A program made the position numbers and the translations under genes. A stretch of 64,000 nucleotides of DNA, from NCBI GenBank assembly GCA_025558095.1, contig JAIVFI010000031.1, positions 186,001-250,000 on the forward strand. The letters run 5' to 3'. This document shows positions 14,087 through 34,830 of the stretch, in pieces. The notes beneath the pieces were generated by a model. That model made no database searches, had not been told where the DNA came from, and saw nothing but the letters and a program-made list of their open reading frames with translations. Each line of letters begins with the position of its first letter. The first letter of the stretch is position 1. The stretch comes from Hyaloraphidium curvatum SAG 235-1 (Eukaryota > Fungi > Monoblepharomycota).

Positions 14087-17000
14087 TAGAATAGTATTGG
14101 TGACCCGGACCTGCCCCTGCGCTGGCTTGGCCGCTGTTACACCATCAGTTTGCTGCTAATTTGAAGTGTGTCATCGTGCATCTTTTTCATTTTCCCTGTT
14201 TTCTGTCCTTCATGGACTTTGAGATGAAGCTGGCAATGGAGTTGAGGGCCTTCTCCTTCTGCCGCCTCGCTTTGATCGTGGGCTCGAACTCCTTGATGCT
14301 AAGAGCCCAGAGCCAGGTCTCCATGTTCCACTCGCGGCCTAGTGCTTCCAATCTAGTCTGCAGCTTCTGGCGCCGCTCCGCATTTGCTGAACAGTGAAAC
14401 AGAAAGTGTTGTTCGTCTCCAATGTGCTCAGGGTCATGCTTGCACGTTCTCTGCTGCACCTCAAGTCCTTGGTGCCTGCCTGTCTCCACCTCCAGGTCGT
14501 GGGTAGAGCAGAGCAGCTTCTGGACGTCCCTCCGGTGCTTCTCCACCCGGATTAGGGATGGTCCGATGTGGCCAAAGGTCATGTCACACATCCTCCAAAA
14601 GTGCAGTTTGTCGTTGTCCTTGAGCCTCTGGGCATTGATCTCCCTGAACTTGCCCTTCACAAGATTCTCCACAGTCTCCTTGGCCCATGAAAGAGTGTCC
14701 TTCTCCCATGCCACATCTCCCTCCCCTCCTCTCCACCATAGTATACAAGTAGTTCCCCCCCCAGGAAGGCAGCCCAGTTCCAGCACCCCTTCAGTGCCTC
14801 GATCTTGAGCTCCTTGTAGAGCAGTTACAATGCAGGGTCAGCTGTTTTGATGCGCATGAGGAACTTGAGAGCCGACTCATGGTCATGAACTGCAAGAGGG
14901 TACTGGCCAGTGATCGCATACAGACAAGCCAAGGAGGTTGATTTGGGCTGATGAGGGACAGCACGAAGGGCCATGCATGTCACTTTGTCCCTGGTGCTTT
15001 CCCCGGCAAGGTACTCCTCCTTCGGCATCTCAACAATGAATGGGTTCCCATATTGGCCCACCGCCTTGACCTTCGTGTTGTAGAGCTTGAGCTGGACGTC
15101 AGGACTCATCCCAGCCTGCTCCCTGATGTCGCAGAGCCAGAGCCCATAAGCAGCATTCATCTTGGCCTCCCTGCCATGCACATGGTCCTTGCTCCGCCCA
15201 GTTGATGTGAGCTGGTACCCCAGAAGCTTGAAGCTGTCGACCCTCTTCAGCTCCTGGCCCCTGTACAGGAGCTTCAACGGTGGGGTATCCTCCTGGCCAT
15301 CCACTCTGTTTTGCTGACGTTGATCTCCAGCCCATTGGCATTGGCATATGCAGACAAAAGATCCAGCTGCATCTTGGCATCTTTCACCGTCTTCGAGATC
15401 AAAGTGGTGTTGTCTGCCAAGAACAAAGCCAGCAAGCTGACCATCCTTTATTTCCTGATCCTCCTCTTCCTCAAACACCATGCCCAGATCCATCCCTTTT
15501 GCACCATTGGCCTCCATGAAAGCAGTGATGTCGTTGATGAACAAGATGAAAAACAGCGATGAGAGGGTGGGGTTCCCCCTGCTTCACTCCAGTTAGGAAC
15601 TTGATGAAGTCCGACTTTGTGCCGTCCTCATCCCGGAGCCTTCCCCACACCGGACCCGCCCAAACGCCATCTCGAACATGTCAACAATCTGTTTGGGTGT
15701 GTACACCCATCTCCTCCAGCTTCTTCCACAACCTCGGGTGTTCCACCGTGTCAAAAGCCTTTGTGAATTCTACAAACACCATGATCAGCTTCTCCTTGCA
15801 TGCCTTGGCCAACGAGAAGAGTGCCTCAGCGAGAAACACTGCATGAAGGGTTGACCTCCGTGCCTGGAATCCAAACTGCGAGCCTTCCAGCAGCTTGTTG
15901 CACTCAGCCCAGGGAGCTAGCCGAGCGTTACAGACCAGCAGGGAAAAGACCTTCTCCAGCGTCCTCTCTATGCTGATGCCTCGGTAGTTGCCAGCCACGT
16001 TCTTGGGCCCCTTCTTGTGCAGCATCACCAGCAGTGTCTGGCCCCAGTCATCCATCTTGACGCCATTGAGCACGTCGTTGAGGAAGTTGACAACAGCTTG
16101 CTTCAGTACTGCAGTCCCGTACTTGACGAACTCGAGCCGGATCCCATCCTCATCCTTTGCCTTGCCGTTGGGGGCCTTCTTCAAGACCCTCTCCAGCTCC
16201 TTGAGGGTGATGGGGCGCAGCAGGTCTCCAGAAGGCGTGATCGTGGCCTTGGGAAGTGGTGGAAACGTGAGCCTTGGATCCTCCTCGATCTTGGTCACGT
16301 ACTCGGCGCTGGCGACCATCTCCATGTGGCGCACCAGCTCTGCAAAGGGCACGGGGTTGCCCTTGCGCCTTGCGTGAGCCTTTCCAAGCAGCTGGTAGTA
16401 CCCCTTAGGCTCTCGCCTGAAGAGTCGCTCTAGCAGCTTGGAGTTCTCTCGCTCAGCAACCCTCCGCATCCTCTTCTCCAACTTCTTCCGCTCCTTCTCC
16501 AGCTCCCGCGTCTTCCCCTGGTACTCCTTCTTCCACTCGTCTTTCTCCATGAGGGATCGCAGCTCAAGAAGGCGTGACAGCTTCCGATCGATCTCGACCC
16601 TCTCTGCCGAGTCCGCAAAGCCGTTGAGGAACTTGTCCGCCTCTTCGTGTACGCTGACCTTGTCGTACTTCTTCTTCGCGACCTTGTTCACCACTGCCAT
16701 GATCTGGATGAGCCGGTTGCACTTGTCGGATCCAGCTTGAAGTTGCTCGTACTCTTGCATTGCCTCCTTGACCCAGGGCTCATCGTAGAGGTTTCGCATT
16801 ATTGCGAGGAAGTGGAAGTCGCACGGCACGGGCTTGCAGTGCGGCTTGTTCTCTTTCGCAGCTGGTCGCACGAGGTTGGCCTTGATGGTCAGGCTCAGGG
16901 CCATGTGGTCTGAGGTGACGACCCAGCCTTCCTTCACAAATGCAAGCTGGGTGACCGTCCCGTAGCGGCTCTGCGGCACGATTGCGTAGTCCAAGGTGCT

Positions 17001-17249
17001 GTCCTGCTCGCCATCCTTTCCTGCGCGAGTTGTTGCCCCCGGCTCAAGGCGCCCATTCAGGATCACCAGCTCCTCCTCGTGGCACAGTGCAAGTAGCTGT
17101 TTCCTCCTCCGATCCGTGCGCTGCTCCGACCGGATTACACGCTTTCCGAAGCTCGTGCCACGCACGTCGCTGTTTGCCTCGCTTATCCCCACATGTGCGT
17201 TCAGGTCCCCGATCACGATCGGCATGTCGCACCCAGCCACAATCCCTGA
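14087..17249 (-). mobile_element. Non-LTR retrotransposon (LINE, APE+RT, possibly RTEX-like): 3' part of ORF2 and 3' tail, decayed
   Basis: APE C-half (IVIGDLNAHVG, STLDYAIV, TSDH), RT (NYRGISI, SQFGFQ, EFTKAFDTVEH, GVKQGEP), C-terminal LEVETGR...RTC...GDEQHFLFHC, and tail ...GGGTCACCAATACTATTCTA. Frameshifts are present. Clade assignment is tentative. Confidence 0.9.
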
Positions 17250-18539
17250 AACTCCAATCCAGCCACATCCACCCTGCCCCACCCCGCCCGCCGCTCGCGC
17301 ACTCTCTGGGTCGCAAGCGGCGGGGAAGCAGTGTCCGGGGACGTCGTGCTTTAGGGCTCTGGCCTTCTAGCGCGGCGCCGGCGTGGTGTGCGGACTGCGG
17401 AACCGGGGACGCGCTGACGGGACCGGCTGCCCTAACCGGTTCCCCAAGCGTGGCAGGCAACGTCGCGCGGGCGTCTGAGGAGCTCATTGTCCTCTGGAAG
17501 CTCGCGCGCGCTGCCCTGCGGGGCGGCTATGCTCTTCCCCAAGGGGCAACGCGTCTGTTTGGGCTCAAGCAACGTCGCGTGCCAAGAACGCGACGAGGCC
17601 CACCCTACCGCGTGCCTCACGTGCGCCGCTCAAGAAGTGCAACTACAGCCGCGTGGCTCTCTGGCTCTGGGCGCGGATATACCGGCACTTCGACGGGCAG
17701 TGTGCGGCAAACACGAGGTCGCGTCGCTCCCCGGACGCGGCCGCAAACATTCCAGCGGCCAAACGCGTGCGCTTTCTGGTGCGGAAGGACGCGAATGGAG
17801 CAAGCAGCTGCGTGGCTCAGTGGCCCTAAGCGAAGCTGACTGCCCGCGGACGTGCCTCATGAGGAGGGGTCGGCGACCCACAAACAACGGCACTCCGGGG
17901 ATTCCGGTCTCCGGACACGTATCCAGACGCGTGCGTCCTCTTGTGCGAGGGGGCGCGGACAGGTGCAGATTGCTACGCGGCTCACTGGCTCTGTGCGTGG
18001 CCATTTGCCACTGGTGTTCCTGTGCGGCGCCGGTGACGTGTGGTGACAACATCGAGGGGACTCTGGTCTCCAAATTAGCACCCTGACGCGTGCGCTTCTT
18101 CAGTGGGGGCCGCAAATGGGATCATAAATCTGCAGCGCGCTTCGGCGCAATCTGCCGTGGGTCCAGCTGGGGGGCAAGCGGCACCAAACAACCCGTGACG
18201 CGTATTGTCGCGTTGCACAAACACACAACTGCCCTATTGAGGGGCGAACCAAACCAAACTCTTCGGCTTGGGACCTAGATGAAGCTGCACGTTGGACATG
18301 CACCTGCTAGATGGGAAGGTCCCAACCCCAAACCGAAACCAAACTGCTCTTTACCTCTGGAAGGTTTTTCACCTTCGTGGGAAGGTTTTCATGCCAGCAA
18401 ACACACCGGGGACTGTGAACATCCTGTAGGCACATTGGAAAGCGGAGGCAGATAGGTCACCCTAGCTAAACTGATGGTGTAATAGCGGCCAAGCCAAGGG
18501 CAGGTCCGGGTCACCAATACCATTCCATTCCATTCCATT
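17250..18539 (+). mobile_element. Non-autonomous, SINE-like retroposon carrying the LINE 3' tail
   Basis: Flanked by TSD CCTGA (17245-17249 and 18540-18544). Ends with AAACTGATGGTGTAATAGCGGCCAAGCC..GGGCAGGTCCGGGTCACCAATA followed by CCATT repeats, matching the LINE tail. No credible ORF. Confidence 0.8.
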
Positions 18540-18555
18540 CCTGAGAACCTCGACC

Positions 18556-18771
18556 TGTTGCTGGCGATGGATGGATGTGTTTGGAGCCGTTGGATCGAGT
18601 TGGAGTTGGCCTTGGAGTTGGATGTTGGACTTGGATGGATGGGTGGATCTTGGCTAGACAATAACCTAGGAGGGCGGCTCTAAGAAAAGGGAGAATAACA
18701 CAACAAACACCAGGAACGCCACCTGCTTCATCCGCACCTGTCTCTGGGCGCCTGTGACCAAGGGTCTTTGA
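18556..18771 (+). repeat. Copia 5' LTR of element A (216 bp, TG...GA)
   Basis: Near-identical to 22593-22808 (minus), 25053-25268 and 31223-31438. Confidence 0.95.
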
Positions 18772-18785
18772 GATTAAGAGTCTCA
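18772..18785 (+). promoter_or_regulatory. Primer-binding site complementary to the anticodon arm of tRNA-Lys(CUU); second copy at 25269-25282
   Basis: GATTAAGAGTCTCA immediately follows the LTR and is the reverse complement of TGAGACTCTTAATC, nt 27-40 of a typical eukaryotic tRNA-Lys(CUU). Confidence 0.75.
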
Positions 18786-18833
18786 CCTGCTCTGACACGT
18801 ACCTGCTACCCCTGGAAGCCCGCCCGCGACAGG

Positions 18834-20138
18834 ATGACAGCCAATGATGCCGACAAGCCCATCCTGCTCAACACCGGTGATAACATGGTCCAGTGGGACC
18901 GCAAGGCCCCCATCTACCTCAACAAGCTCGGGGTGTACGAGTACGTCGTCAACAACGTCCTCAGCCTCGACTGGCAGCTCGAGCAGGCTCGCAAGCGGGC
19001 CGCTGAGCGCGGCAACGCTCCAGGGCTGACCGACCGGCAGAGGGATGCCATCCTTATCGAGGAAGAGAAGGCCGCGCACGCGACCCTCACGGAACACAAG
19101 TTCAGGACGACGGCCGAAAAGGCCTACGGCGAGCTCATGTTGATGCTCGACGACGTCCTCCAGGAAGCATTCGACGAGCCCAAGACGGCCTACGACCTCT
19201 GGATCGCGATTCACAAGAAGTTCAAGGTTGGAAAGGCGCGCCTGGTACACGCGTCCCAGGTCCGCGTAAACAAGTGGCAGTGGGACGCTTCAAAGACTGT
19301 GGACCAGAACTTCAACGAGCTGCTCAGCATCAAGTCAGAGAGGGCTGCGCACAAGAAACCGCTCTCAGACTACGACGTGGCCCTGATGGTGACATTCACC
19401 GAAGGTTTTCCGTTCGCGGAGCTCCAAGGATTCTGGGGCCGAATCATTGACGAGGACGGACACTTCGACCAAGATGGCAAGAGCGAGAGTATAACGTTCT
19501 CGTTCAATGGCATGCGGGATGCGGCTAACACGGCCCAAGGAAACAAGAAACCGGATGCACCTGTCAAGATGACAGTCCCGGCGACGCTCCCGCCCCCTGC
19601 TGGATTTGGCCCCGGTTTCGCTGCCTATCAGCCGCACCAACAAGTTCCCCGTGGTGGTGGCAACCCCAGTCGGCCTCCGCAGCGCCCCTGTAACGAGCAC
19701 GGTCGCTACGCTCCGTACCCCAGCTACAGGCCGAGCGGCATGGCTCCTATCCAAGGCCAGGGCCATGATCCTCGGATGCGCGGCCGCGGGTTGGCACGTG
19801 GCGGAGGCCGCGGCTACTACCCCGCACCGAGGCCGATGGGCGGCCCAAGCTACCGCCCGGCTGGCGCTGCCGTTTGGAGGCCGGCTCCGGTGACCAGTGA
19901 GATCACCTGCCGCGAATGCGGCAAGCCGGGACACGTGGCATCGGCGTGCCCCGACAAGAAGTGCCACAATTGCAACGGCAAGGGGCACGTACAGCGCGAG
20001 TGCCCGTCACCGCCCCAGCAGCCGTACGCCATGCTGGCAGATGCCCAGATGGAACACAGCGAGGGTGAGAATCGGGGGGGGATCCTGGGCCGAGGTGCCC
20101 GCACCGCGAAGGGGCTGCGGTGCTCGGCGCTTGGTTGA
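18834..20138 (+). CDS. gag: Copia Gag of element A (unspliced form)
   Basis: MTANDADK...KAYGELML...KTAYDLWIAIHKKF, an RG/P-rich region, and two CCHC knuckles (CRECGKPGHVASAC, CHNCNGKGHVQREC). Confidence 0.9.
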   Translation: MTANDADKPILLNTGDNMVQWDRKAPIYLNKLGVYEYVVNNVLSLDWQLEQARKRAAERGNAPGLTDRQRDAILIEEEKAAHATLTEHKFRTTAEKAYGELMLMLDDVLQEAFDEPKTAYDLWIAIHKKFKVGKARLVHASQVRVNKWQWDASKTVDQNFNELLSIKSERAAHKKPLSDYDVALMVTFTEGFPFAELQGFWGRIIDEDGHFDQDGKSESITFSFNGMRDAANTAQGNKKPDAPVKMTVPATLPPPAGFGPGFAAYQPHQQVPRGGGNPSRPPQRPCNEHGRYAPYPSYRPSGMAPIQGQGHDPRMRGRGLARGGGRGYYPAPRPMGGPSYRPAGAAVWRPAPVTSEITCRECGKPGHVASACPDKKCHNCNGKGHVQRECPSPPQQPYAMLADAQMEHSEGENRGGILGRGARTAKGLRCSALG

Positions 20139-20651
20139 AAAGGAGGGCCGCGGGCTCCGCGTCGCGAAGGGCCGAGGGCCAGACGCTTGAAGAAGAGGGC
20201 CGCGGGCTCTGCGTCACGAAGGGCCGAGGGCCAGACGCTTGAAGAAGAGGGCCGCGGGCCCCGCGTCGCGAAGGGCCGAGGGCCAGACGCTTGAAGAAGA
20301 GCGCCGCGAAGGGGCCGCGGGCCCGGCGTGTGGAGTGTGGGCCGCGGGCCCGGCGTCGCGAAGGGGCCCGTGTGCCCAGTGCCTGAGGCCGCGGTTGCCT
20401 GCCAGGAGGGGCCGCGGGCCCAGCGCTAGGTGTGGAGTTTGAGTGCGAGAAGTGACGGGACGCTGGGCACATCACCAGCCGCCGACGCGGGGGACCAGCG
20501 TCGGTGGCTGGTCGCGCACGAAACCTCGCACCCTCGTCCCATTTGATGCTGATCATCTTTCTCATCTTTCTCCTCCTTTCTCCTCTCGCCCATACTTGGT
20601 GCCATGCCTGCTCTTCCCTCCGATGCCGTTTCTTTTTGTTCATCCGGTAAG
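20065..20651 (+). other. Predicted spliceosomal intron in the copia gag-pol junction; second copy at 26167-26753
   Basis: Donor GAGG|GTGAGA, branch-like GCTGAT at ~20548, a ~100 nt AG-free pyrimidine tract, and acceptor TAAG|AT. The phase-1 junction restores the pol frame. Confidence 0.7.
20135..20300 (+). repeat. 52-bp tandem repeat (~3.2 copies) inside the predicted copia intron; second copy at 26237-26402
   Basis: Units TTGAAGAAGAGGGCCGCGGGC...GGCCAGACGC start at 20135, 20187, 20239 and 20291. Confidence 0.9.
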
Positions 20652-20899
20652 ATGGCAGTGCCGCGAACGAAGGTAACTCACCCGCCCCGCACCCCGATCG
20701 CTCTTCATCGCAGCATTGCCTGACAGCCTTTGGCTTCCTGGGATACGGCTCGATGCATGGTGACAGTGAGGGAGCCGATTTTGGCTATGTCGGCTACGAC
20801 CAAGAGTCCGGCGGCGGAGTGACTTACGGCGACGCCTTCGGAGCGACCTACGGCGACGGCTTCGACAACTGACTACGTAGCGGCGGGGAGGCCGCTGCG

Positions 20900-22592
20900 A
20901 TGCCGACCGTGACGGCCAACGCCGTTTCGGGGGAGGACATCGACGGCGGCATGGTACAAGCTCAACACGCTCGCGCGTACATCAACCATATTCGAGCCAA
21001 CAACTGTGATTCCTTCTTCGATTCTGGCGCGAGCCGCAACTCTACCAATACCCTAAGCGACCTGACCAAACTCTACTCGATACCCAAGTTCGTTGTGCAT
21101 GGACTTACGGGGCCCGTGGAGGTGTCACAGGCTGGCACCATGTACGTGCGTTTTCGCACGAGCGGACCCGTTGTTCGGCTTGACAACGTTCTTTTCATGC
21201 CGAGCACACCGTGCCGCCTGTTTTCGGAAACGGCATTGGCCGCCGCCGGCGTTCGATCCAGGAACTGCTACCTGGCTGACAAGGAGATGCAGAAACAGCT
21301 ATACCTCGTGGACGGCACGGAGCTGTGCGTTCTTCCTCAGCAAAACGGCGTATTCCCGATGCCGATCGAGGTCGTCAAACCGGGGTCAACGTCGCAGGCC
21401 ATGTGGGGACTCACCGACGCAGATTTGATCCGACTGCGAGGGGTACGCATGTCACGCCTCTACGATCGCCACCTGTGGCATGCCCGATGTGCGCACGCTC
21501 ACATTGAGCGCATCCGGATAGCGCAGAGGTCGGGTGCGGTGCTTGGCCTTGAGAACGTCGATCTGGGCCCCGAGTCGGAGGTTATCGAGTGCGATGTCTG
21601 CCTGCACGCGAAGCTGACGACCGCGCCGTTCCGCCCCTCGATGCGTGAGCACGTCAAGGACGTCATGGATCTCTGGCACGTTGATCTCAAGGGCCCGGTC
21701 GATATCACTTCCGTGCACGGCGACCGCTACTGGATGGACGTCAAGGACGAGTGGTCGCAGCAGCTTTGGTCGATCCCCCTGAAGACCAAGGACGAAGCAG
21801 CACCTCTCCTTCAACACCTCATCGTGTGGGCCGAGACGCAGACTGGGAAACGCCTCAAGCACCTCCAGTCTGACCAGGGTACCGAGCTCGGGCGGTGGAA
21901 CGCGCGGGAGCTGGGCTGGTTCCAGACCTGGTTACGTGAACGAGGCACTCACTTCCGGGTCTCCATACCCAATACGCCTCAACAGAACGCGGTACCCGAA
22001 CGCGAGCATCGTTCCCAGGTCGAGGGGGTACTTGCGCTCTGCATCCAGGCTGACGTCGAGAAGCGTTTCTGGAACTATGCCCTCGCATACAAGACTGAGG
22101 TCCGCAACATGCTCCCAACGGTGAAGACGATGCAACGGGGCGCAAACGGAACGGTTACCACGCCGCATGAGCTATGGACAGGGACTAAACCCGACCTGTC
22201 ACGCCTCCGCACGTTCGGGTCGGAGTGCTGGTACGGTATCCTCCCCAGCCAGCGCAAGGCTCTGGACGACCGTGCACACCGTGCGATCTTCCTCGGTTTC
22301 CCGAAGCACCTGAAGGCGTACACCTTGCTGGATCTCACCACAGGCAAGATCGTCCATGCACGATCAGTGGTCTTCAACGAGCGCTATTCTAAACGTTCGC
22401 CCGGCTCCTTCCGCGACATTGATGCGCTGGGCAAGCATCGCCCTTTTGCTCTCGTACCTCCCCGCCTTCCTCATCGGCTCTCAAAGCCGGCGGATGCGGC
22501 AGTCGACGAAGACAGCGATGACGATCAGCGGACACCACCAAGGGATGCGGGGACGGGACTTCAGGAACCTGCTCAGCGCAATGAGGCAGGAG
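20900..22592 (+). pseudogene. pol: Copia pol 5' half (protease and integrase) of element A, interrupted
   Basis: FFDSGAS protease, LWHARCAH...CDVC, and integrase HVDLKG/SDQGTE/PQQNAVPERE. Cut at AGGAG by an inverted LTR. Confidence 0.92.
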
Positions 22593-22808
22593 TCAAAGAC
22601 CCCTGGTCACAGGCGCCCAGAGACAGGTGCGGATGAAGCAGGTGGCGTTCCTGGTGTTTGTTGTGTTATTCTCCCTTTTCTTAGAGCCGCCCTCCTAGGT
22701 TATTGTCTAGCCAAGATCCACCCATCCATCCAAGTCCAACATCCAACTCCAAGGCCAACTCCAACTCGATCCAACGGCTCCAAACACATCCATCCATCGC
22801 CAGCAACA
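22593..22808 (-). repeat. Copia LTR, inverted (B-type allele), with polypurine tract at 22809-22819
   Basis: Reverse complement of the 216-bp LTR; followed by CTCCCCCATTT. Confidence 0.95.
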
Positions 22809-23071
22809 CTCCCCCATTTGGAGGCGAGTGGATCGAGTGGAGTCCCCCACCGCATGCTCCTCCACGCCCCGGGATTGAGCTCCTTGGGCTGCCTAGGCCA
22901 GGCTCCCTGATGACACCTCCCCCCAAGACCGGGCGATCCAATCGCCGTACAAAAAGCTCCCCCAGAGACCATACATGCAAAGAAAGTACAAGAAACAATA
23001 CAATCCAGAGGTACACGTAGGGGAGACTCCCCCAGAAGCCAAGGAACGTCTGCCCGCTAGCCTCAGGCTCA

Positions 23072-25052
23072 TCACGGGCAGAGATTCCCGGCAGGGTCCG
23101 GCTCGCAGAGAACGCTGGCCTCAGCCGAACCCGTATCAAGGTCAACAACACCAATGCGCGCACGGAAAAGTTCAAAAAGGGCCGGAGCTAGAGGCTTGGT
23201 AAAGCCGTCCCCAAGGTTGTCGTCTGACACCACCCGTGCAGTCTCAATCGTTCCATTTTGCACAGTGTCGCAAACCAGGTGGTACTTGATATCGATGTGC
23301 TTCGTCCGCTCGTGAAACTTAGGATCACGAGCGAGTTGTTCAGCAGACATGTTGTCCTCGAAAAGTCGCGTAGGTGTCGTCCACGCAAAGCCAAGTTCCT
23401 GCAGGATGGAGCGCAGCCAGAGAATGTTGCGAACTGCATGCGCCATAGCAACATACTCGGCTTCCGTAGTAGACTGTGCAACGATGGATTGCCGCTTGGT
23501 CAGCCAAGCAATACTGGAAGCACCCATGAGGATGACGAGACCCGTGGTCGACTTGCGGGTCATCACACAGCCAGCAAAATCGGCATCTGCATAAGCACAG
23601 AGATCCAAGCAATCGCCAGACGCAGGACGACGGCCAAGAACAAGTCCATAGGTACGGGTGCGGCGGAGGTAGCGTAAGACATCTCGAAGCACCTTGATGT
23701 GAAGAGGTCCGAAGCTGTTGGCAAAGCGAGAAAGAAAGATCACGGCAAAGGCAATATCTGGCCGTGTCGTGATGGCGATCCAAAGTAGAGATCCAACCAG
23801 GCCCTTGTAGTTGAAACTTTTGACGTCGTCTTGGATCTTCGTCGGCAGGCTGTCAAACACCGCGGGATCAAATGGGCGCAGCGTCTGGAGTGCATCCGGT
23901 CGCATCGGCGTGAGAGCAGACTTCGTCTCCTTGCTGGGAACATCACGCGTGAATCCAAACTCGCGGAGGACGCGGTCGATGTACGCCGTCTGCGACAACG
24001 AGATTGTACCGGTGCCGGTGTCGCGACGGATGTGCACGCCCAAGCAGTAAGTGACAGAGCCCAGCGAGTTGATGTTGAAATGCTGCTTGAGGCTGCCAAA
24101 CAACTCGTCAATCTCCAGTTGTGAGGTGGCAGCAACCAGCAAGTCGTCGACGTAGACAAAGATGATCATAATGCGGCCGGCCGTGAAGCGCACGTAGAGA
24201 CAGCTCTCGGAGGCCAGCTTCACGAATCCAGCCTGGCGGAGGAAATGATCAAGCATTGCAAGGAACAAGCGCATCGCTTGCCGTAATCCATAGAGACTCT
24301 TTAGCAGGCGAAGCACCGTGCGCGAGGAAGACTCCTTGAGGAACCGCCAACCCGGAGGCGGTCTGATGTAGACAGTGTAGTCCAGTGGAGCATGCAGAAA
24401 CGCCGTCTTGATGTCCCAGTGATCACAGAGGAGTCCCAGCGTGGCAACAAGAAGGAGGAAGAGGCGGAAGACAACTTGGTTAGGAACGGCAGCGAACGTA
24501 TCGTAGTACGTTTGCTCGGACTGGCGGTTTCCGTCCGCCACCAAGCGTGCCTTGAAGCGCGTAACGTTGTTGTTCTGGTCCTTCTTGACGTCGTAGACGT
24601 AGTGCGAGGGCACCACCTTGTCCTCGTCACCAGCGGGTAGTTCCGTCTCCTCGACCACACCCATCTCAAGAATAGACTTGTTCTCCTCCTGCCGCGCTTC
24701 CTCCCACTGAGCCGCATGCGGTGACCTCTGCGATTCGTTGTATGTGCGCGGAACGGTGACATCGTGCACCGACAGCAGGGTCACCGGGCTCGTGTCTGGG
24801 TCAGGGGCGCTGGCACCTGGTATGCACCACATCTCGAAGGCTGGGAAGCGGAAGGAAGGAGAGCACGTCAGCGGAGTGGCGATCATGGCGTAGGGCATGA
24901 TGAGAGGGTCTGGCAGACCATCATCAGGTCCAGCGAGGGGATGCGGCGCAGCACCCAGCTCATCGCCATCACCAGCGTCCGTTGCCTCCTGCTCCACGTC
25001 GAGCGGGTACTCAATCTCTTCCTCAAGAAGCTCCCACTCGTACGCCTCTCCT
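23072..25052 (-). pseudogene. pol: Copia pol 3' half (RT and RNase H), inverted
   Basis: RFKARLVADG, LLKSLYGLRQ, YVDD, YADADFA and KHIDIKYH; near-identical to 28690-30670. Confidence 0.93.
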
Positions 25053-25268
25053 TGTTGCTGGCGATGGATGGATGTGTTTGGAGCCGTTGGATCGAGTTGG
25101 AGTTGGCCTTGGAGTTGGATGTTGGACTTGGATGGATGGGTGGATCTTGGCTAGACAATAACCTAGGAGGGCGGCTCTAAGAAAAGGGAGAATAACACAA
25201 CAAACACCAGGAACGCCACCTGCTTCATCCGCACCTGTCTCTGGGCGCCTGTGACCAGGGGTCTTTGA
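25053..25268 (+). repeat. Copia 5' LTR of element B
   Basis: 216-bp LTR followed by the primer-binding site; shares the GTGACCAGGGGTC allele with the LTR at 22593. Confidence 0.95.
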
Positions 25269-25330
25269 GATTAAGAGTCTCACCTGCTCTGACACGTACC
25301 TGCTACCCCTGGAAGCCCGCCCGCGACAGG

Positions 25331-26240
25331 ATGACAGCCAATGATGCCGACAAGCCCATCCTGCTCAACACCGGTGATAACATGGTCCAGTGGGACCGCA
25401 AGGCCCCCATCTACCTCAACAAGCTCGGGGTGTACGAGTACGTCGTCAACAACGTCCTCAGCCTCGACTGGCAGCTCGAGCAGGCTCGCAAGCGGGCCGC
25501 TGAGCGCGGCAACGCTCCAGGGCTGACCGACCGGCAGAGGGATGCCATCCTTATCGAGGAAGAGAAGGCCGCGCACGCGACCCTCACGGAACACAAGTTC
25601 AGGACGACGGCCGAAAAGGCCTACGGCGAGCTCATGTTGATGCTCGACGACGTCCTCCAGGAAGCATTCGACGAGCCCAAGACGGCCTACGACCTCTGGA
25701 TCGCGATTCACAAGAAGTTCAAGGTTGGAAAGGCGCGCCTGGTACACACGTCCCAGGTCCGCGTAAACAAGTGGCAGTGGGACGCTTCAAAGACTGTGGA
25801 CCGGAACTTCAACGAGCTGCTCAGCATCAAGTCAGAGAGGGCTGCGCACAAGAAACCGCTCTCAGACTACGACGTGGCCCTGATGGTGACATTCACCGAA
25901 GGTTTTCCGTTCGCGGAGCTCCAAGGATTCTGGGGCCGAATCATTGACGAGCTACCGCCCGGCTGGCGCTGCCGTTTGGAGGCCGGCTCCGGTGACCAGT
26001 GAGATCACCTGCCGCGAATGCGGCAAGCCGGGACACGTGGCATCGGCGTGCCCCGACAAGAAGTGCCACAATTGCAACGGCAAGGGGCACGTACAGCGCG
26101 AGTGCCCGTCACCGCCCCAGCAGCCGTACGCCATGCTGGCAGATGCCCAGATGGAACACAGCGAGGGTGAGAATCGGGGGGGGATCCTGGGCCGAGGTGC
26201 CCGCACCGCGAAGGGGCTGCGGTGCTCGGCGCTTGGTTGA
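25331..26240 (+). pseudogene. gag: Copia gag of element B with a 395-bp frameshifting deletion
   Basis: Near-identical to gag A but lacks the equivalent of 19455-19849 (junction at ~25951, AG microhomology). Confidence 0.9.
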
Positions 26241-27001
26241 AAAGGAGGGCCGCGGGCTCCGCGTCGCGAAGGGCCGAGGGCCAGACGCTTGAAGAAGAGG
26301 GCCGCGGGCTCTGCGTCACGAAGGGCCGAGGGCCAGACGCTTGAAGAAGAGGGCCGCGGGCCCCGCGTCGCGAAGGGCCGAGGGCCAGACGCTTGAAGAA
26401 GAGCGCCGCGAAGGGGCCGCGGGCCCGGCGTGTGGAGTGTGGGCCGCGGGCCCGGCGTCGCGAAGGGGCCCGTGTGCCCAGTGCCTGAGGCCGCGGTTGC
26501 CTGCCAGGAGGGGCCGCGGGCCCAGCGCTAGGTGTGGAGTTTGAGTGCGAGAAGTGACGGGACGCTGGGCACATCACCAGCCGCCGACGCGGGGGACCAG
26601 CGTCGGTGGCTGGTCGCGCACGAAACCTCGCACCCTCGTCCCATTTGATGCTGATCATCTTTCTCATCTTTCTCCTCCTTTCTCCTCTCGCCCATACTTG
26701 GTGCCATGCCTGCTCTTCCCTCCGATGCCGTTTCTTTTTGTTCATCCGGTAAGATGGCAGTGCCGCGAACGAAGGTAACTCACCCGCCCCGCACCCCGAT
26801 CGCTCTTCATCGCAGCATTGCCTGACAGCCTTTGGCTTCCTGGGATACGGCTCGATGCATGGTGACAGTGAGGGAGCCGATTTTGGCTATGTCGGCTACG
26901 ACCAAGAGTCCGGCGGCGGAGTGACTTACGGCGACGCCTTCGGAGCGACCTACGGCGACGGCTTCGACAACTGACTACGTAGCGGCGGGGAGGCCGCTGC
27001 G

Positions 27002-30000
27002 ATGCCGACCGTGACGGCCAACGCCGTTTCGGGGGAGGACATCGACGGCGGCATGGTACAAGCTCAACACGCTCGCGCATACATCAACCATATTCGAGCC
27101 AACAACTGTGATTCCTTCTTCGATTCTGGCGCGAGCCGCAACTCTACCAATACCCTAAGCGACCTGACCAAAGTCTACTCGATACCCAAGTTCGTTGTGC
27201 ATGGACTTACGGGGCCCGTGGAGGTGTCACAGGCTGGCACCATGTACGTGCGTTTTCGCACGAGCGGACCCGTTGTTCGGCTTGACAACGTTCTTTTCAT
27301 GCCGAGCACACCGCGCCACCTGTTTTCGGAAACGGCATTGGCCGCCGCCGGCGTTCGATCCAGGAACTGCTACCTGGCTGACAAGGAGATGCAGAAACAG
27401 CTATACCTCGTGGACGGCACGGAGCTGTGCGTTCTTCCTCAGCAAAACGGCGTATTCCCGATGCCGATCGAGGTCGTCAAACCGGGGTCAACGTCGCAGG
27501 CCATGTGGGGACTCACCGACGCGGATTTGATCCGACTGCGAGGGGTACGCATGTCACGCCTCTACGATCGCCACCTGTGGCATGCCCGATGTGCGCACGC
27601 TCACATTGAGCGCATCCGGATAGCGCAGAGGTCGGGTGCGGTGCTTGGCCTTGAGAACGTCGATCTGGGCCCCGAGTCGGAGGTTATCGAGTGCGATGTC
27701 TGCCTGCGCGCGAAGCTGACGACCGCGCCGTTCCGCCCCTCGATGCGTGAGCACGTCAAGGACGTCATGGATCTCTGGCACGTTGATCTCAAGGGCCCGG
27801 TCGATATCACTTCCGTGCACGGCGACCGCTACTGGATGGACGTCAAGGACGAGTGGTCGCAGCAGCTTTGGTCGATCCCCCTGAAGACCAAGGACGAAGC
27901 AGCACCTCTCCTTCAACACCTCATCGTGTGGGCCGAGACGCAGACTGGGAAACGCCTCAAGCACCTCCAGTCTGACCAGGGTACCGAGCTCGGGCGGTGG
28001 AACGCGCGGGAGCTGGGCTGGTTCCAGACCTGGTTACGTGAACGAGGCACTCACTTCCGGGTCTCCATACCCAATACGCCTCAACAGAACGCGGTACCCG
28101 AACGCGAGCATCGTTCCCAGGTCGAGGGGGTACTTGCGCTCTGCATCCAGGCTGACGTCGAGAAGCGTTTCTGGAACTATGCCCTCGCATACAAGACTGA
28201 GGTCCGCAACATGCTCCCAACGGTGAAGACGATGCAACGGGGCGCAAACGGAACGGTTACCACGCCGCATGAGCTATGGACAGGGACTAAACCCGACCTG
28301 TCACGCCTCCGCACGTTCGGGTCGGAGTGCTGGTACGGTATCCTCCCCAGCCAGCGCAAGGCTCTGGACGACCGTGCACACCGTGCGATCTTCCTCGGTT
28401 TCCCGAAGCACCTGAAGGCGTACACCTTGCTGGATCTAACCACAGGCAAGATCGTCCATGCGCGATCAGTGGTCTTCAACGAGCGCTATTCTAAACGTTC
28501 GCCCGGCTCCTTCCGCGACATTGATGCGCTGGGCAAGCATCGCCCTTTTGCTCTCGTACCTCCCCGCCTTCCTCATCGGCTCTCAAAGCCGGCGGATGCG
28601 GCAGTCGACGAAGACAGCGATGACGATCAGCGGACACCACCAAGGGATGCGGGGACGGGACTTCAGGAACCTGCTCAACGCAATGAGGCAGGAGAGGCGT
28701 ACGAGTGGGAGCTTCTTGAGGAAGAGATTGAGTACCCGCTCGACGTGGAGCAGGAGGCAACGGACGCTGGTGATGGCGATGAGCTGGGTGCTGCGCCGCA
28801 TCCCCTCGCTGGACCTGATGATGGTCTGCCAGACCCTCTCATCATGCCCTACGCCATGATCGCCACTCCGCTGACGTGCTCTCCTTCCTTCCGCTTCCCA
28901 GCCTTCGAGATGTGGCGCATACCAGGTGCCAGCGCCCCTGACCCAGACACGAGCCCGGTGACCCTGCTGTCGGTGCACGATGTCACCGTTCCGCGCACAT
29001 ACAACGAATCGCAGAGGTCACCGCATGCGGCTCAGTGGGAGGAAGCGCGGCAGGAGGAGAACAAGTCGATTCTTGAGATGGGTGTGGTCGAGGAGACGGA
29101 ACTACCCGCTGGTGACGAGGACAAGGTGGTGCCCTCGCACTACGTCTACGACGTCAAGAAGGACCAGAACAACAACGTTACGCGCTTCAAGGCACGCTTG
29201 GTGGCGGACGGAAACCGCCAGTCCGAGCAAACGTACTACGATACGTTCGCTGCCGTTCCTAACCAAGTTGTCTTCCGCCTCTTCCTCCTTCTTGTTGCCA
29301 CGCTGGGACTCCTCTGTGATCACTGGGACATCAAGACGGCGTTTCTGCATGCTCCACTGGACTACACTGTCTACATCAGACCGCCTCCGGGTTGGCGGTT
29401 CCTCAAGGAGTCTTCCTCGCGCACGGTGCTTCGCCTGCTAAAGAGTCTCTATGGATTACGGCAAGCGATGCGCTTGTTCCTTGCAATGCTTGATCATTTC
29501 CTCCGCCAGGCTGGATTCGTGAAGCTGGCCTCCGAGAGCTGTCTCTACGTGCGCTTCACGGCCGGCCGCATTATGATCATCTTTGTCTACGTCGACGACT
29601 TGCTGGTTGCTGCCACCTCACAACTGGAGATTGACGAGTTGTTTGGCAGCCTCAAGCAGCATTTCAACATCAACTCGCTGGGCTCTGTCACTTACTGCTT
29701 GGGCGTGCACATCCGTCGCGACACCGGCACCGGTACAATCTCGTTGTCGCAGACGGCGTACATCGACCGCGTCCTCCGCGAGTTTGGATTCACGCGTGAT
29801 GTTCCCAGCAAGGAGACGAAGTCTGCTCTCACGCCGATGCGACCGGATGCACTCCAGACGCTGCGCCCATTTGATCCCGCGGTGTTTGACAGCCTGCCGA
29901 CGAAGATCCAAGACGACGTCAAAAGTTTCAACTACAAGGGCCTGGTTGGATCTCTACTTTGGATCGCCATCACGACACGGCCAGATATTGCCTTTGCCGT

Positions 30001-30670
30001 GATCTTTCTTTCTCGCTTTGCCAACAGCTTCGGACCTCTTCACATCAAGGTGCTTCGAGATGTCTTACGCTACCTCCGCCGCACCCGTACCTATGGACTT
30101 GTTCTTGGCCGTCGTCCTGCGTCTGGCGATTGCTTGGATCTCTGTGCTTATGCAGATGCCGATTTTGCTGGCTGTGTGATGACCCGCAAGTCGACCACGG
30201 GTCTCGTCATCCTCATGGGTGCTTCCAGTATTGCTTGGCTGACCAAGCGGCAATCCATCGTTGCACAGTCTACTACGGAAGCCGAGTATGTTGCTATGGC
30301 GCATGCAGTTCGCAACATTCTCTGGCTGCGCTCCATCCTGCAGGAACTTGGCTTTGCGTGGACGACACCTACGCGACTTTTCGAGGACAACATGTCTGCT
30401 GAACAACTCGCTCGTGATCCTAAGTTTCACGAGCGGACGAAGCACATCGATATCAAGTACCACCTGGTTTGCGACACTGTGCAAAATGGAACGATTGAGA
30501 CTGCACGGGTGGTGTCAGACGACAACCTTGGGGACGGCTTTACCAAGCCTCTAGCTCCGGCCCTTTTTGAACTTTTCCGTGCGCGCATTGGTGTTGTTGA
30601 CCTTGATACGGGTTCGGCTGAGGCCAGCGTTCTCTGCGAGCCGGACCCTGCCGGGAATCTCTGCCCGTGA
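27002..30670 (+). CDS. pol: Intact copia Pol (PR-INT-RT-RH), 1222 aa from the first ATG
   Basis: Uninterrupted ORF with all catalytic motifs; integrase precedes RT, which defines Ty1/copia. Confidence 0.96.
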   Translation: MPTVTANAVSGEDIDGGMVQAQHARAYINHIRANNCDSFFDSGASRNSTNTLSDLTKVYSIPKFVVHGLTGPVEVSQAGTMYVRFRTSGPVVRLDNVLFMPSTPRHLFSETALAAAGVRSRNCYLADKEMQKQLYLVDGTELCVLPQQNGVFPMPIEVVKPGSTSQAMWGLTDADLIRLRGVRMSRLYDRHLWHARCAHAHIERIRIAQRSGAVLGLENVDLGPESEVIECDVCLRAKLTTAPFRPSMREHVKDVMDLWHVDLKGPVDITSVHGDRYWMDVKDEWSQQLWSIPLKTKDEAAPLLQHLIVWAETQTGKRLKHLQSDQGTELGRWNARELGWFQTWLRERGTHFRVSIPNTPQQNAVPEREHRSQVEGVLALCIQADVEKRFWNYALAYKTEVRNMLPTVKTMQRGANGTVTTPHELWTGTKPDLSRLRTFGSECWYGILPSQRKALDDRAHRAIFLGFPKHLKAYTLLDLTTGKIVHARSVVFNERYSKRSPGSFRDIDALGKHRPFALVPPRLPHRLSKPADAAVDEDSDDDQRTPPRDAGTGLQEPAQRNEAGEAYEWELLEEEIEYPLDVEQEATDAGDGDELGAAPHPLAGPDDGLPDPLIMPYAMIATPLTCSPSFRFPAFEMWRIPGASAPDPDTSPVTLLSVHDVTVPRTYNESQRSPHAAQWEEARQEENKSILEMGVVEETELPAGDEDKVVPSHYVYDVKKDQNNNVTRFKARLVADGNRQSEQTYYDTFAAVPNQVVFRLFLLLVATLGLLCDHWDIKTAFLHAPLDYTVYIRPPPGWRFLKESSSRTVLRLLKSLYGLRQAMRLFLAMLDHFLRQAGFVKLASESCLYVRFTAGRIMIIFVYVDDLLVAATSQLEIDELFGSLKQHFNINSLGSVTYCLGVHIRRDTGTGTISLSQTAYIDRVLREFGFTRDVPSKETKSALTPMRPDALQTLRPFDPAVFDSLPTKIQDDVKSFNYKGLVGSLLWIAITTRPDIAFAVIFLSRFANSFGPLHIKVLRDVLRYLRRTRTYGLVLGRRPASGDCLDLCAYADADFAGCVMTRKSTTGLVILMGASSIAWLTKRQSIVAQSTTEAEYVAMAHAVRNILWLRSILQELGFAWTTPTRLFEDNMSAEQLARDPKFHERTKHIDIKYHLVCDTVQNGTIETARVVSDDNLGDGFTKPLAPALFELFRARIGVVDLDTGSAEASVLCEPDPAGNLCP

Positions 30671-30836
30671 TGAGCCTGAGGCTAGCGGGCAGCCGTTCCT
30701 TGGCTTCTGGGGGAGTCACCCCTACGTGTACCTCTGGATTGTATTGTTTCTTGTACTTTCTTTGCATGTATGGTCTCTGGGGGAGCTTTTTTGTACGGCG
30801 ATTGGATCGCCCGGTCTTGGGGGGAGGTGTCATCAG

Positions 30837-31272
30837 GGAGCCTGGCCTAGGCAGCCCAAGGAGCTCAATCCCGGGGCGTGGAGGAGCATGCGGTGGGGGA
30901 CTCCACTCGATCCACTCGCCTCCAAATGGGGGAGTGTTGCTGGCGATGGATGGATGTGTTTGGAGCCGTTGGATCGAGTTGGAGCCTGGCCTAGGCAGCC
31001 CAAGGAGCTCAATCCCGGGGCGTGGAGGAGCATGCGGTGGGGGACTCCACTCGATCCACTCGCCTCCAAATGGGGGAGTGTTGCTGGCGATGGATGGATG
31101 TGTTTGGAGCCGTTGGATCGAGTTGGAGCCTGGCCTAGGCAGCCCAAGGAGCTCAATCCCGGGGCGTGGAGGAGCATGCGGTGGGGGACTCCACTCGATC
31201 CACTCGCCTCCAAATGGGGGAGTGTTGCTGGCGATGGATGGATGTGTTTGGAGCCGTTGGATCGAGTTGGAG
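30837..31272 (+). repeat. 144-bp tandem triplication spanning the 3' UTR, polypurine tract and LTR start
   Basis: Units start at 30837, 30981 and 31125; LTR starts (TGTTG) occur at 30935, 31079 and 31223. Confidence 0.95.
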
Positions 31273-31438
31273 TTGGCCTTGGAGTTGGATGTTGGACTTG
31301 GATGAATGGGTGGATCTTGGCTAGACAATAACCTAGGAGGGCGGCTCTAAGAAAAGGGAGAATAACACAACAAACACCAGGAACGCCACCTGCTTCATCC
31401 GCACCTGTCTCTGGGCGCCTGTGACCAAGGGTCTTTGA
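31223..31438 (+). repeat. Copia 3' LTR (A-type allele)
   Basis: One visible mismatch to the 18556 LTR (GATGAATGG versus GATGGATGG); followed by TSD CGACC. Confidence 0.95.
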
Positions 31439-34469: not shown

Positions 34470-34830
34470 GAGACCATGCATGGGAGCACCAGATGGTCCG
34501 ACCGCGCGAGAACTCGGCGAGGAGCACGAGAGAGAAAGAGAAAGATGTCCTGCACGGGAGAACCGGCAGAGCAGAGAAAGGAGATGGCCTGCACGGGAGC
34601 ACCGGCAGAGCGAAGGAAGAGAGATGGCCTGCACGGGAGCACCGGCAGAGCAGAGGAAGAGAGATCACCTGCACGGGAGCACCGGCAGAGCAGAGAAGGA
34701 GAGATCGCCTGCACGGGAGCACCAGCAGAGCAGAGAACGAGAAAAGGCCCGCACAGGAGCACCGGCGGAGTGAGAAAGAAAGACCATGCGTGGGAGAACC
34801 ACGATGGCCCGCATGGGAGTACCAGCGGGA
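34470..34830 (+). repeat. ~38-41 bp purine-rich tandem repeat array
   Basis: CCTGCACGGGAGCACCGGCAGAGCAGAG... repeated about 6 times with degenerate flanking units. Confidence 0.9.

What the first reader, a model, noticed from the sequence alone, without database searches (positions are those of the whole stretch)
20040..20960. Copia retrotransposon whose pol appears to need both intron splicing and UGA readthrough
Seen: gag stops at 20138 and the pol ATG is at 20900, with a repeat-filled spacer between. The spacer has a donor GAGG|GTGAGA (20065), a GCTGAT branch-like motif, ~100 nt of AG-free pyrimidine tract and an acceptor TAAG| (20651). Splicing gives ...MEHSE-D-GSAANEGNSPAPHPD...YGDGFDN, open for ~73 codons in the pol frame, then one TGA (20870-20872) followed by CTA and LRSGGEAAAMPT... 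into the protease. A 9-bp hairpin (CGTAGCGGC-GGGGAG-GCCGCTGCG, 20876-20899) and a second hairpin follow. The arrangement is identical in copy B (intron 26167-26753, TGA 26972). Known: UGA-CUA with downstream structure is a classic readthrough context; Candida Tca2 has a UGA between gag and pol; Drosophila copia splices to remove pol; Ogre (gypsy) has an intron within pol. Inference: unspliced RNA gives genome plus short Gag, spliced RNA gives extended Gag, and spliced RNA with readthrough gives Gag-Pol. I do not recognise this double gate from described copia elements.
Basis: partly seen in the sequence, partly recalled or inferred. Interest (0 to 1): 0.88.

Follow-up and report, generated by a model that had tools for sequence, protein, structure and literature searches.

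The report
Copia retrotransposon with intron-split gag-pol
A family of copia-type jumping genes in the early-diverging fungus Hyaloraphidium keeps an intron and then a stop codon between its coat-protein gene and its enzyme gene; making the enzymes therefore seems to need splicing plus a way past the stop, a layout not described for copia elements and supported here by comparing copies, not by RNA data.

Summary
Copy B is identical over the region, so it adds nothing. Other copies in the same genome are informative. They form three lineages (dS up to 0.38), two of which have intact ORFs and near-identical LTRs.

All copies keep the GTGAG donor right after the gag zinc knuckles and the GGTAAG| acceptor block. 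The spacer between them varies from 564 to 713 nt, with length mod 3 of 0 or 2. Exon 1 still always ends in phase 1, and exon 2 always restores the pol frame. Exon 2 is under frame-specific purifying selection, and the tail read into the spacer is not conserved. An intron is therefore well supported, at about 0.8.

The in-frame stop is always a stop followed by CTA: TGA in two lineages and TAA in one. A stable, conserved hairpin follows it. Readthrough is the best reading of how the stop is passed, but it is unproven. A second small intron, or separate initiation of pol, remains possible.

The AAG acceptor and the intron length are unlike 16 host introns, which all end in YAG and measure 43-70 nt.

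The host is Hyaloraphidium curvatum or a very close relative. Verdict: a real feature and a new variant of a known kind.

The parts
18556..18771 (+). 5' LTR of copy A (216 nt, starts TGTTG)
   Evidence: Repeat families D2, I4 and I5. LTR pairs in other copies are 99-100% identical.
18834..20064 (+). gag exon 1: ATG 18834, Retrotran_gag_2 region, two CCHC zinc knuckles, ends in phase 1 (...MEHSE + G)
   Evidence: dN/dS between lineages is 0.19-0.31.
20065..20651 (+). Putative intron of 587 nt, from GTGAGA to TAAG. Unspliced RNA reads 24 further codons and stops at TGA 20136-20138.
   Evidence: The donor is kept in all copies. The length is 564-713 nt (mod 3 = 2,2,0,2,0,0). The read-in tail is frame-shifted between lineages at 24, 42, 59 or 69 aa.
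20135..20308 (+). 52-nt tandem repeat, 3.3 copies, inside a strongly structured GC-rich 5' part of the intron
   Evidence: TRF. Copy number varies between relatives. The fold of 20065-20520 is -258.7 kcal/mol, z -3.4.
20540..20651 (+). 3' end of the intron: an AG-free pyrimidine-rich tract with CTGAT at 20548-20552, then the conserved block GTTCATCCGGTAAG (TTCAT at 20639-20643, 9 nt before the AG)
   Evidence: The block GTTCATnnCGGTAAG is kept while the tract around it cannot be aligned between lineages. The CCGGTAAG core is kept in the C23 relic, where the TTCAT part reads TTGAAT.
20652..20869 (+). Exon 2: 2 nt plus 72 codons in the pol frame. It extends Gag if the RNA is spliced.
   Evidence: Frame-specific purifying selection: winA versus C1 gives 13 synonymous and 9 non-synonymous changes, dN/dS 0.19, p 0.0002. 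The first 45 codons give 0.18-0.32 in all three pairs. The last 27 codons are ambiguous. The peptide is also recognisable in the C23 relic.
20870..20875 (+). In-frame stop TGA followed by CTA. Together with the preceding C it also reads CTGAC.
   Evidence: The stop is TGA-CTA in winA, winB, C37, C24 and C1. It is TAA-CTA in C30, C43, C42, C11 and C27.
20876..20952 (+). Two predicted hairpins: 20876-20899 (9 bp with loop GGGGAG) and 20900-20952
   Evidence: Across the copies 97.5% of cells are paired. One pair occurs as G-C, G-U and A-U. There are no clean double changes.
20873..22592 (+). pol of copy A: nine codons, ATG 20900, protease DSG near 21020, integrase. It is cut at 22592.
26167..26974 (+). 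The same intron (26167-26753), exon 2 and TGA (26972-26974) in copy B, identical to copy A
27002..30670 (+). Complete pol ORF of copy B, 1222 aa counted from the ATG
   Evidence: pol dN/dS between lineages is 0.13-0.17 for the three pairs among winA, C1 and C30, and up to 0.25 in pairs that include the broken copy C43.

Best explanation
This is a Ty1/copia LTR retrotransposon family of Hyaloraphidium curvatum or a very near relative. Its gag and pol are separated by a spliceosomal intron and then by one in-frame stop codon. Three RNA fates follow. (1) Unspliced RNA keeps the intron, which every genomic copy retains, so this RNA is the one that is reverse-transcribed. If translated, it gives Gag with a short, unconserved tail. 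(2) Spliced RNA joins 20064 to 20652, or to an in-frame AG a few codons further on. It encodes Gag with a conserved extension of about 70 residues that ends at UGA or UAA. (3) A minority of ribosomes on the spliced RNA pass the stop, most likely by readthrough in the UGA/UAA-CUA context helped by the hairpin just downstream. That yields Gag-Pol. Shown here: the sequence features and their conservation, the preserved splice phase, and coding constraint on exon 2 and pol. Inferred: that splicing happens, which AG is used, that the stop is read through, and any role of the structured repeat-bearing intron. A role in export or packaging of unspliced RNA is speculation.
For: The genome search found ten copies carrying this junction, in three lineages (aligned).

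Intron:
- The donor GGTGAG and the acceptor block CGGTAAG are kept in all of them, and in a relic of a sister family on contig C23.
- Spacer length is 564-713 nt with mod 3 of 2,2,0,2,0,0. The genomic frame relation of gag and pol therefore changes between copies.
- Exon 1 nevertheless always ends in phase 1, and exon 2 is always 2+3n nt up to the stop.
- The tail read into the spacer is frame-shifted between lineages.
- Exon 2 shows frame-specific purifying selection: dN/dS 0.19 with p 0.0002 in the pol frame, against 1.4 and 4.0 in the other two frames for winA versus C1. The first 45 codons give 0.18-0.32 in all pairs.
- The pol frame is closed by the TAA inside GGTAAG, and most copies have no ATG after it, so translation has to enter from upstream.

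Activity:
- Copies C1 and C30 have intact gag and pol. Their LTR pairs match at 213/213 and 207/208 positions.
- pol dN/dS is 0.13-0.17, so pol is expressed and selected.

Stop:
- The stop is always a stop followed by CTA.
- The hairpins are stable (z -3.6) and kept, and one pair runs G-C, G-U, A-U.
- C1 has ATC where the others have ATG 20900, so pol does not depend on that start codon.
- In the fungus Ustilago, UGA followed by CU(A) alone is enough for efficient readthrough (PMC4207609).
Against: - There is no RNA or protein evidence.
- Sixteen host introns read in two genes of the window are 43-70 nt long and end in CAG (14) or TAG (2), never AAG. The proposed intron is about ten times longer and ends in AAG.
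- GGTAAG is itself a host-type donor sequence.
- One lineage uses UAA, and in Ustilago UAA or UAG lowered readthrough.
- The stem begins 3 nt after the stop, not about 8 nt as in classic cases (general knowledge).
- The stop with its flanking bases reads CTGAC or TACTAAC, which is the host branch-point consensus.
- The last 27 codons of exon 2 show no clear coding constraint in two of the three pairs.
- The C23 relic has no in-frame stop.
- In Tca2, a gag-UGA-pol junction with a predicted pseudoknot did not direct readthrough in yeast reporters (PMC2194720).
Confidence: 0.45

Rival explanations
1. The intron is real, but Pol is made separately from Gag. Routes include initiation or reinitiation at ATG 20900 or at the conserved ATG near 20951, an internal promoter in the repeat-filled spacer, or a differently spliced pol mRNA as in foamy viruses. 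The stop is then simply the end of Gag.
For: The ATG lies 27 nt after the stop in most copies. The Tca2 gag-pol junction holds a minor internal promoter, and readthrough could not be shown there (PMC2194720). Foamy-virus assembly differs from that of other retroviruses (PMC7828637, listed); that their Pol is made from its own spliced mRNA is from my own knowledge. UAA in the C30 lineage is a poor readthrough codon.
Against: The intact young copy C1 has ATC instead of ATG 20900. pol is kept in frame with exon 2 in every copy. The C23 relic reads straight through this point as one ORF. Copia Pol is normally brought into particles as a Gag-Pol fusion (general knowledge).
Confidence: 0.2
2. The intron is real, and the stop is removed by a second, short, alternatively spliced intron. 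Its donor would be TAT|GTCGGC (intron starts at 20789), its branch point the CTRAC that overlaps the stop, and its acceptor GGGGAG| (intron ends at 20890). Retention gives Gag and removal gives Gag-Pol.
For: This interval is 102 nt in winA and 78 nt in C30, in frame in both. Donor, CTRAC and GAG| are kept in all copies. C30-type copies read TACTAAC. The length and the branch-to-AG distance (18 nt) are host-like. The AG sits at the 3' edge of the hairpin loop. The codons inside the interval are weakly constrained in two of three pairs.
Against: A GAG acceptor was not seen in 16 of 16 host introns. GTCGGC is an untested donor. winA versus C1 still shows a coding pattern in this stretch (4 synonymous, 3 non-synonymous, dN/dS 0.2). 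The resemblance of C-TRA-C to a branch point may be chance.
Confidence: 0.1
3. There is no functional arrangement. The spacer is an inserted repeat, the stop is a defect carried by a non-autonomous or dying family, and the splice-like motifs are chance.
For: All four young copies of the window's own subfamily are defective, each in a different way. The acceptor and the length are not host-like.
Against: Three lineages separated by dS 0.15-0.38 keep the donor, acceptor block, phase and stop. pol (dN/dS 0.13-0.17) and exon 2 stay under purifying selection. C1 and C30 are intact with near-identical LTRs.
Confidence: 0.05

Closest known systems
Tca2 (Ty1/copia, Candida albicans)
   Same: It is a copia element with gag and pol in the same frame, separated by a single UGA and followed by a predicted RNA structure. 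Pol comes from the gag-UGA-pol RNA (PMC2194720).
   Different: Tca2 has no intron between gag and pol. Its junction alone did not give readthrough in reporters, so its own mechanism is unsettled. Here the stop may be UGA or UAA, and it is always followed by CUA.
Ogre (Ty3/gypsy, legumes)
   Same: It is named with EVADE as a plant LTR retrotransposon that carries a functional intron (review PMC12786077, citing Steinbauerova 2008). From my own knowledge, the Ogre intron lies inside the coding region and must be spliced to restore the downstream pol reading frame. The primary paper is not held here.
   Different: Ogre belongs to a different superfamily. From my own knowledge, its intron lies between protease and reverse transcriptase, not between gag and protease, and no stop codon follows the junction.
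Drosophila copia, Arabidopsis EVD and other Ty1/copia, barley BARE1
   Same: The splice donor sits just downstream of gag, and the intron is several times longer than typical host introns. Splicing sets the balance of Gag to Pol (PMC5580714; PMC3735527).
   Different: The logic is reversed. In those elements the unspliced RNA holds one gag-pol ORF, and splicing removes protease or pol to give a gag-only mRNA. Here the unspliced RNA cannot give Pol, and splicing is needed to reach the pol frame.
Murine leukaemia virus gag-pol readthrough, and the short fungal/animal UGA-CUA readthrough context
   Same: An in-frame stop lies between gag and pol with structure downstream. UGA-CU(A) alone is enough for readthrough in Ustilago (PMC4207609; MLV as summarised in PMC5580714).
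   Different: MLV uses UAG-G and a pseudoknot about 8 nt downstream. Here a simple hairpin starts 3 nt after the stop, and one lineage has UAA. No efficiency has been measured.
Foamy viruses (spliced pol mRNA)
   Same: From my own knowledge, foamy-virus Pol expression depends on a splicing event. The review found (PMC7828637) covers how foamy-virus assembly differs from other retroviruses.
   Different: From my own knowledge, foamy Pol is made without Gag from its own AUG. Here exon 2 and pol stay in frame with gag.

Membership tests
Ty1/copia LTR retrotransposon | pol domain order protease - integrase - reverse transcriptase/RNase H | tested here: met
   Pfam on the 1222-aa pol gives Pol_BBD at 40-117, rve at 257-360, SH3_retrovirus at 427-496 and RVT_2 at 706-933.
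Ty1/copia LTR retrotransposon | copia-type gag with a zinc knuckle, and flanking LTRs | tested here: met
   zf-CCHC occurs twice (E 7.6e-10). Retrotran_gag_2 scores 24.9 bits, just under the 27-bit cut-off. LTRs of about 213-216 nt are 99-100% identical within copies.
Spliceosomal intron of this host | GT (or GC) donor matching the host pattern | tested here: met
   G|GTGAGA or GTGAGC is kept in all copies. Host donors include GTGAGT, GTAAGG and GTGGGC.
Spliceosomal intron of this host | YAG acceptor preceded by a CTRAY-like branch site 10-25 nt upstream, and length near 43-70 nt | tested here: not met
   The acceptor is AAG, which occurs in 0 of 16 host introns. The nearest branch-like motif is TTCAT, 9 nt upstream. 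The length is 564-713 nt. C1-type, C30-type and C23 copies also have an in-frame CAG 42 nt further on, which is lost in the window's subfamily.
Spliceosomal intron of this host | spliced junction seen in RNA | not testable with these tools
Programmed stop-codon readthrough (gag-stop-pol) | single in-frame stop between gag and pol, kept as a stop in active relatives | tested here: met
   The stop is TGA in five copies and TAA in five, across three lineages. Two of these copies (C1 and C30) are intact. The single C23 relic has none.
Programmed stop-codon readthrough (gag-stop-pol) | leaky 3' context and a stimulatory downstream structure | tested here: inconclusive
   CUA follows the stop in all copies. 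The hairpin is stable and kept, but it starts 3 nt after the stop and covariation is minimal.
Programmed stop-codon readthrough (gag-stop-pol) | measured readthrough, or a peptide across the stop | not testable with these tools
   This needs a reporter assay, ribosome profiling or mass spectrometry.
Copia gag-only subgenomic RNA strategy (Drosophila copia, EVD, BARE1) | unspliced RNA carries one gag-pol ORF, and splicing deletes protease or pol and creates the gag stop | tested here: not met
   Unspliced gag stops at 20138, and stops occur in all frames of the spacer. Splicing keeps exon 2 in the pol frame.

The most novel reading that the evidence does not exclude
In this fungal copia lineage, splicing separates two RNA fates. 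The intron-containing RNA is the genome, and its long, structured, repeat-bearing intron may carry export or packaging signals. The spliced RNA is the only messenger for the full Gag and, through readthrough of UGA/UAA-CUA, for Gag-Pol. This would be an obligatory 'splice, then read through' route to Pol, the reverse of the splicing logic known for copia elements. Sister families in the same genome (the C23 relic and the C29 type) seem to use the intron alone without the stop, which would show the second gate being added or lost.
Probability: 0.35. Interest if true: 0.75.

Novelty: new variant of a known kind. Interest (0 to 1): 0.6.

Why it matters
Retroelements must make much Gag and little Pol, and they must keep one RNA for translation and another for packaging. 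The known solutions are frameshifting, readthrough, degradation of Pol, and splicing that yields a gag-only RNA. An element whose Pol can be reached only after splicing, and then only past a stop, would add a new combination. It would also show that copia elements can use splicing in the opposite sense to Drosophila and plants.

It is also a natural test case in an early-diverging fungus. It bears on whether weak, atypical introns are tolerated or exploited by transposons. It also bears on whether the short UGA-CUA readthrough context works outside Dikarya and animals.

Tried and rejected
- Relatives elsewhere: gag had no hit in the 5.8-billion-protein search. The nearest pol hits are 27-37% identical, ordinary single-ORF copia polyproteins. 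A metagenome scan with a pol alignment confirmed none of its 197 pattern matches. The look-up of encoding contigs for the host adaptin had no record.
- Rfam gave nothing relevant. The protein atlas gave no taxonomic help.
- Splicing from the gag donor to an AG beyond the stop (20880 or 20890) is out of frame with pol.
- The CAG 7 nt after TAAG| in the window's subfamily is out of frame.
- The 246-aa antisense ORF over the spacer is not conserved in frame or sequence.
- A reassigned genetic code or selenocysteine is unlikely. The stop is TGA in some lineages and TAA in others, and gag and pol hold no internal stops.
- Copy B is not independent support because it is identical to copy A.
- The exons were analysed apart by reference, and the piece after the stop was analysed apart from exon 2.
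Full report
**Observation.**
- Gag starts at ATG 18834, has two CCHC knuckles, and runs past a GAGG|GTGAGA site (GT at 20065) to a TGA at 20136-20138.
- A 587-nt spacer follows. It holds a 52-nt tandem repeat (3.3 copies) and a 110-nt stretch without AG, and it ends in CCGGTAAG.
- The TAA inside that block closes the pol frame. From 20652 the pol frame is open for 72 codons to TGA 20870-20872, followed by CTA.
- Two predicted hairpins follow (20876-20899 and 20900-20952; -44.2 kcal/mol, z -3.6). ATG 20900 is in frame.
- Pfam places the element in Ty1/copia.
- Copy B is letter-for-letter the same from 19848 to 20976, so it is not independent evidence.
- Neither copy in the window is whole. Copy A's pol is cut at 22592 by an inverted LTR plus 3' pol piece. 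Copy B lacks about 393 bp of gag.

**Host.** The AP-2 alpha adaptin gene in the window is 99% identical to the annotated protein of Hyaloraphidium curvatum. The next hits are at about 80%, then chytrids at 55-59%. The genome is therefore this monoblepharid fungus or a very close relative (31.9 Mb, 55 contigs).

**Other copies.** A DNA search of the whole assembly found further members. I cut out eight of them. They fall into three lineages:
- the window type (winA, winB, C37, C24), about 99.5% alike;
- C1;
- the C30 type (C30, C43, C42, C11, C27).

Synonymous divergence between lineages is 0.15-0.38. C1 and C30 have intact gag and pol, and their LTR pairs match at 213/213 and 207/208 positions. 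They stand for recently active elements. pol dN/dS is 0.13-0.17 and gag 0.19-0.31.

**The intron.** Every copy keeps G|GTGAG directly after ..MEHSE, and every copy keeps the block GTTCATnnCGGTAAG|.
- Between these two sites the sequence is free to change. The repeat number varies, the 3' half cannot be aligned between lineages, and the length is 587, 572, 615, 713, 588 or 564 nt.
- The length modulo 3 is therefore 2,2,0,2,0,0, so gag and pol stand in different relative frames in different copies.
- Exon 1 nevertheless always ends after the first base of a codon, and the stretch from TAAG| to the stop is always 2+3n bases. Only exact removal of this interval keeps the frame.
- The peptide read into the spacer is frame-shifted between lineages and ends after 24, 42, 59 or 69 codons, so it is not under coding constraint.
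- Exon 2 is under constraint. For winA versus C1 there are 13 synonymous and 9 non-synonymous changes in the pol frame (dN/dS 0.19, p 0.0002), against ratios of 4.0 and 1.4 in the other two frames. The first 45 codons give 0.18-0.32 in all three lineage pairs.
- The frame is shut by TAA just upstream, and most copies have no ATG there. Translation must therefore come in from upstream, and splicing from the conserved gag donor is the simple way.
- A relic of a sister family on contig C23 (51% identical in pol) has the same donor, an intron of only about 137 nt, the same CCGGTAAG| and a recognisable exon-2 peptide.
- A more distant copia family shows a GTGA donor after the zinc knuckle, a spacer filled with 40-nt repeats, and a canonical branch site plus CAG. 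It is represented by contig C29 and a fragment at window 33728-34990, which are 75% alike. In C29 an open pol frame follows without a stop.

I put the intron at about 0.8.

**What speaks against an ordinary intron.** I read 16 host introns in the adaptin and glycogen phosphorylase genes of the window.
- They are 43-70 nt long.
- They end in CAG (14) or TAG (2).
- They have a CTRAY-like branch site 10-25 nt before the AG.

The element's intron is ten times longer and ends in AAG, and GGTAAG is itself a host-type donor. Other in-frame AGs exist: AAG at +18 or +21 in all family copies, and CAG at +42 in C1, the C30 type and C23 but not in the window type. The exact 3' splice site is therefore open and may differ between lineages. 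A weak site would fit an element that must keep much of its RNA unspliced, because all genomic copies retain the intron.

**The stop.** All ten copies have a stop at this codon, always followed by CTA: TGA in the window type and C1, TAA in the C30 type. C1 is the outgroup by dS, so TGA is probably ancestral.
- The hairpins are kept (97.5% of cells paired). One pair occurs as G-C, G-U and A-U, but there is no clean double change.
- C1 has ATC in place of ATG 20900, so pol does not rest on that start codon.
- In Ustilago maydis, UGA followed by CU(A) is enough for efficient readthrough, and UAA or UAG lowers it (PMC4207609).

Readthrough is thus the most economical reading, but it is not shown. 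Four things count against it or leave it open:
- The TAA lineage exists and has been successful.
- The stem starts only 3 nt after the stop.
- In Tca2, the one copia element known with a gag-UGA-pol junction, the junction did not give readthrough in reporters (PMC2194720).
- The C23 relic reads through this point with no stop. There the CTGACTAC motif is out of frame and a 7-nt insertion follows it.

**A rival I could not exclude.** With its neighbouring bases the stop reads CTGAC or TACTAAC, the host branch-point consensus. It lies 18 nt before a conserved GGGGAG|, which sits at the 3' edge of the hairpin loop. A conserved TAT|GTCGGC at 20789 would give an in-frame intron of host-like size, 102 nt here and 78 nt in C30. 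Against it, GAG acceptors were absent from the 16 host introns, and winA versus C1 still looks coding there. Separate initiation of pol, or a separate pol mRNA, also remains possible.

**Comparison with known systems.** Copia elements of Drosophila, Arabidopsis and barley splice from a donor just after gag. There, the unspliced RNA is the gag-pol messenger and splicing makes a gag-only RNA (PMC5580714; PMC3735527). Here the logic is reversed.
- Ogre (gypsy) needs splicing to restore pol, but its intron lies inside pol and no stop follows. The review PMC12786077 only names Ogre as intron-bearing. These details are from my own knowledge, and the primary paper is not held.
- Tca2 and MLV have the stop but no intron.
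- I found no description of a copia element with both, or with an intron between gag and protease that must be removed to reach pol. The literature held here is incomplete.

**What could not be done.**
- No close relatives exist in the protein or metagenome collections.
The exons and the piece after the stop were handled apart by reference.

**Verdict.** The intron is well supported by comparison. Passage of the stop by readthrough is plausible but unproven. This is a new variant of copia gene expression. Interest 0.6.

Noticed in passing
window 18556-31439: Two copies of the element sit in a rearranged block. Copy A (18556-22592) is cut in pol and followed by an inverted LTR plus 3' pol piece (22593-25052). 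Part of that piece (22951-25052) is a perfect 2102-nt inverted repeat of 28690-30791. Copy B (25053-31439) follows and lacks about 393 bp of gag. This is either a real inversion or recombination, or an assembly problem.
   Followed up: partly
window 30837-31279: A 144-nt tandem repeat (3.1 copies, 99% alike) lies at the junction of pol 3' end and 3' LTR in copy B. Copies C37 and C24 show one or two units there.
   Followed up: no
window 33728-34990 and L046:6226-7145: A second copia family, represented by two members 75% alike, has the same layout. A zinc knuckle is followed by a GTGA donor, a spacer of 40-nt repeats (34536-34775), a canonical branch site and a CAG acceptor. In the C29 copy an open pol frame of more than 957 aa follows directly, with no stop. 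Both members look degenerate, with a frameshift in gag and a 1-nt difference at the donor.
   Followed up: partly
L045 (contig C23), reverse strand, positions 2900-3300 of the reverse complement: This is a single relic of a sister family, 51% identical in pol. It has the same donor and CCGGTAAG| acceptor but an intron of only about 137 nt and no in-frame stop. The CTGACTAC motif is kept at the nucleotide level although it is out of frame.
   Followed up: partly
contigs C37, C24 and window copies A and B: All four young copies of the window's subfamily (about 99.5% alike) are defective, each in a different way: a TAG in gag (C37), a frameshift in pol (C24), truncation (A) and a gag deletion (B). 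No intact master copy of this subfamily was seen among the loci fetched.
   Followed up: partly
L048 (contig C2) and contig C15: The C2 copy is cut immediately after the pol ATG by the end of another element (..TCACA|CCGACC). The C15 copy's DNA match starts at the same point, which suggests the same break, but I did not confirm it in sequence. If both hold, that would be two independent-looking breaks at one place.
   Followed up: no
window about 4165-4222, minus strand: One intron of the glycogen phosphorylase gene appears to be a GC-AG intron, with donor GCGAGC and about 58 nt long. I inferred it from the conserved ..YQTE|FPDYWL.. join.
   Followed up: no
window 15681-17282 (minus) and 35520-35973: An ORF with an RVT_1 reverse-transcriptase match lies here, with 83-87% repeats of the same sequence flanking the copia block. 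These are fragments of a non-LTR (LINE-like) element into which the copia copies seem to be nested.
   Followed up: no
window 20065-20520: The 5' three-quarters of the intron is predicted to fold very stably (-258.7 kcal/mol, z -3.4). It is built of GGGCCGCGGGC-type palindromic units separated by GAAGAAGAG.
   Followed up: partly
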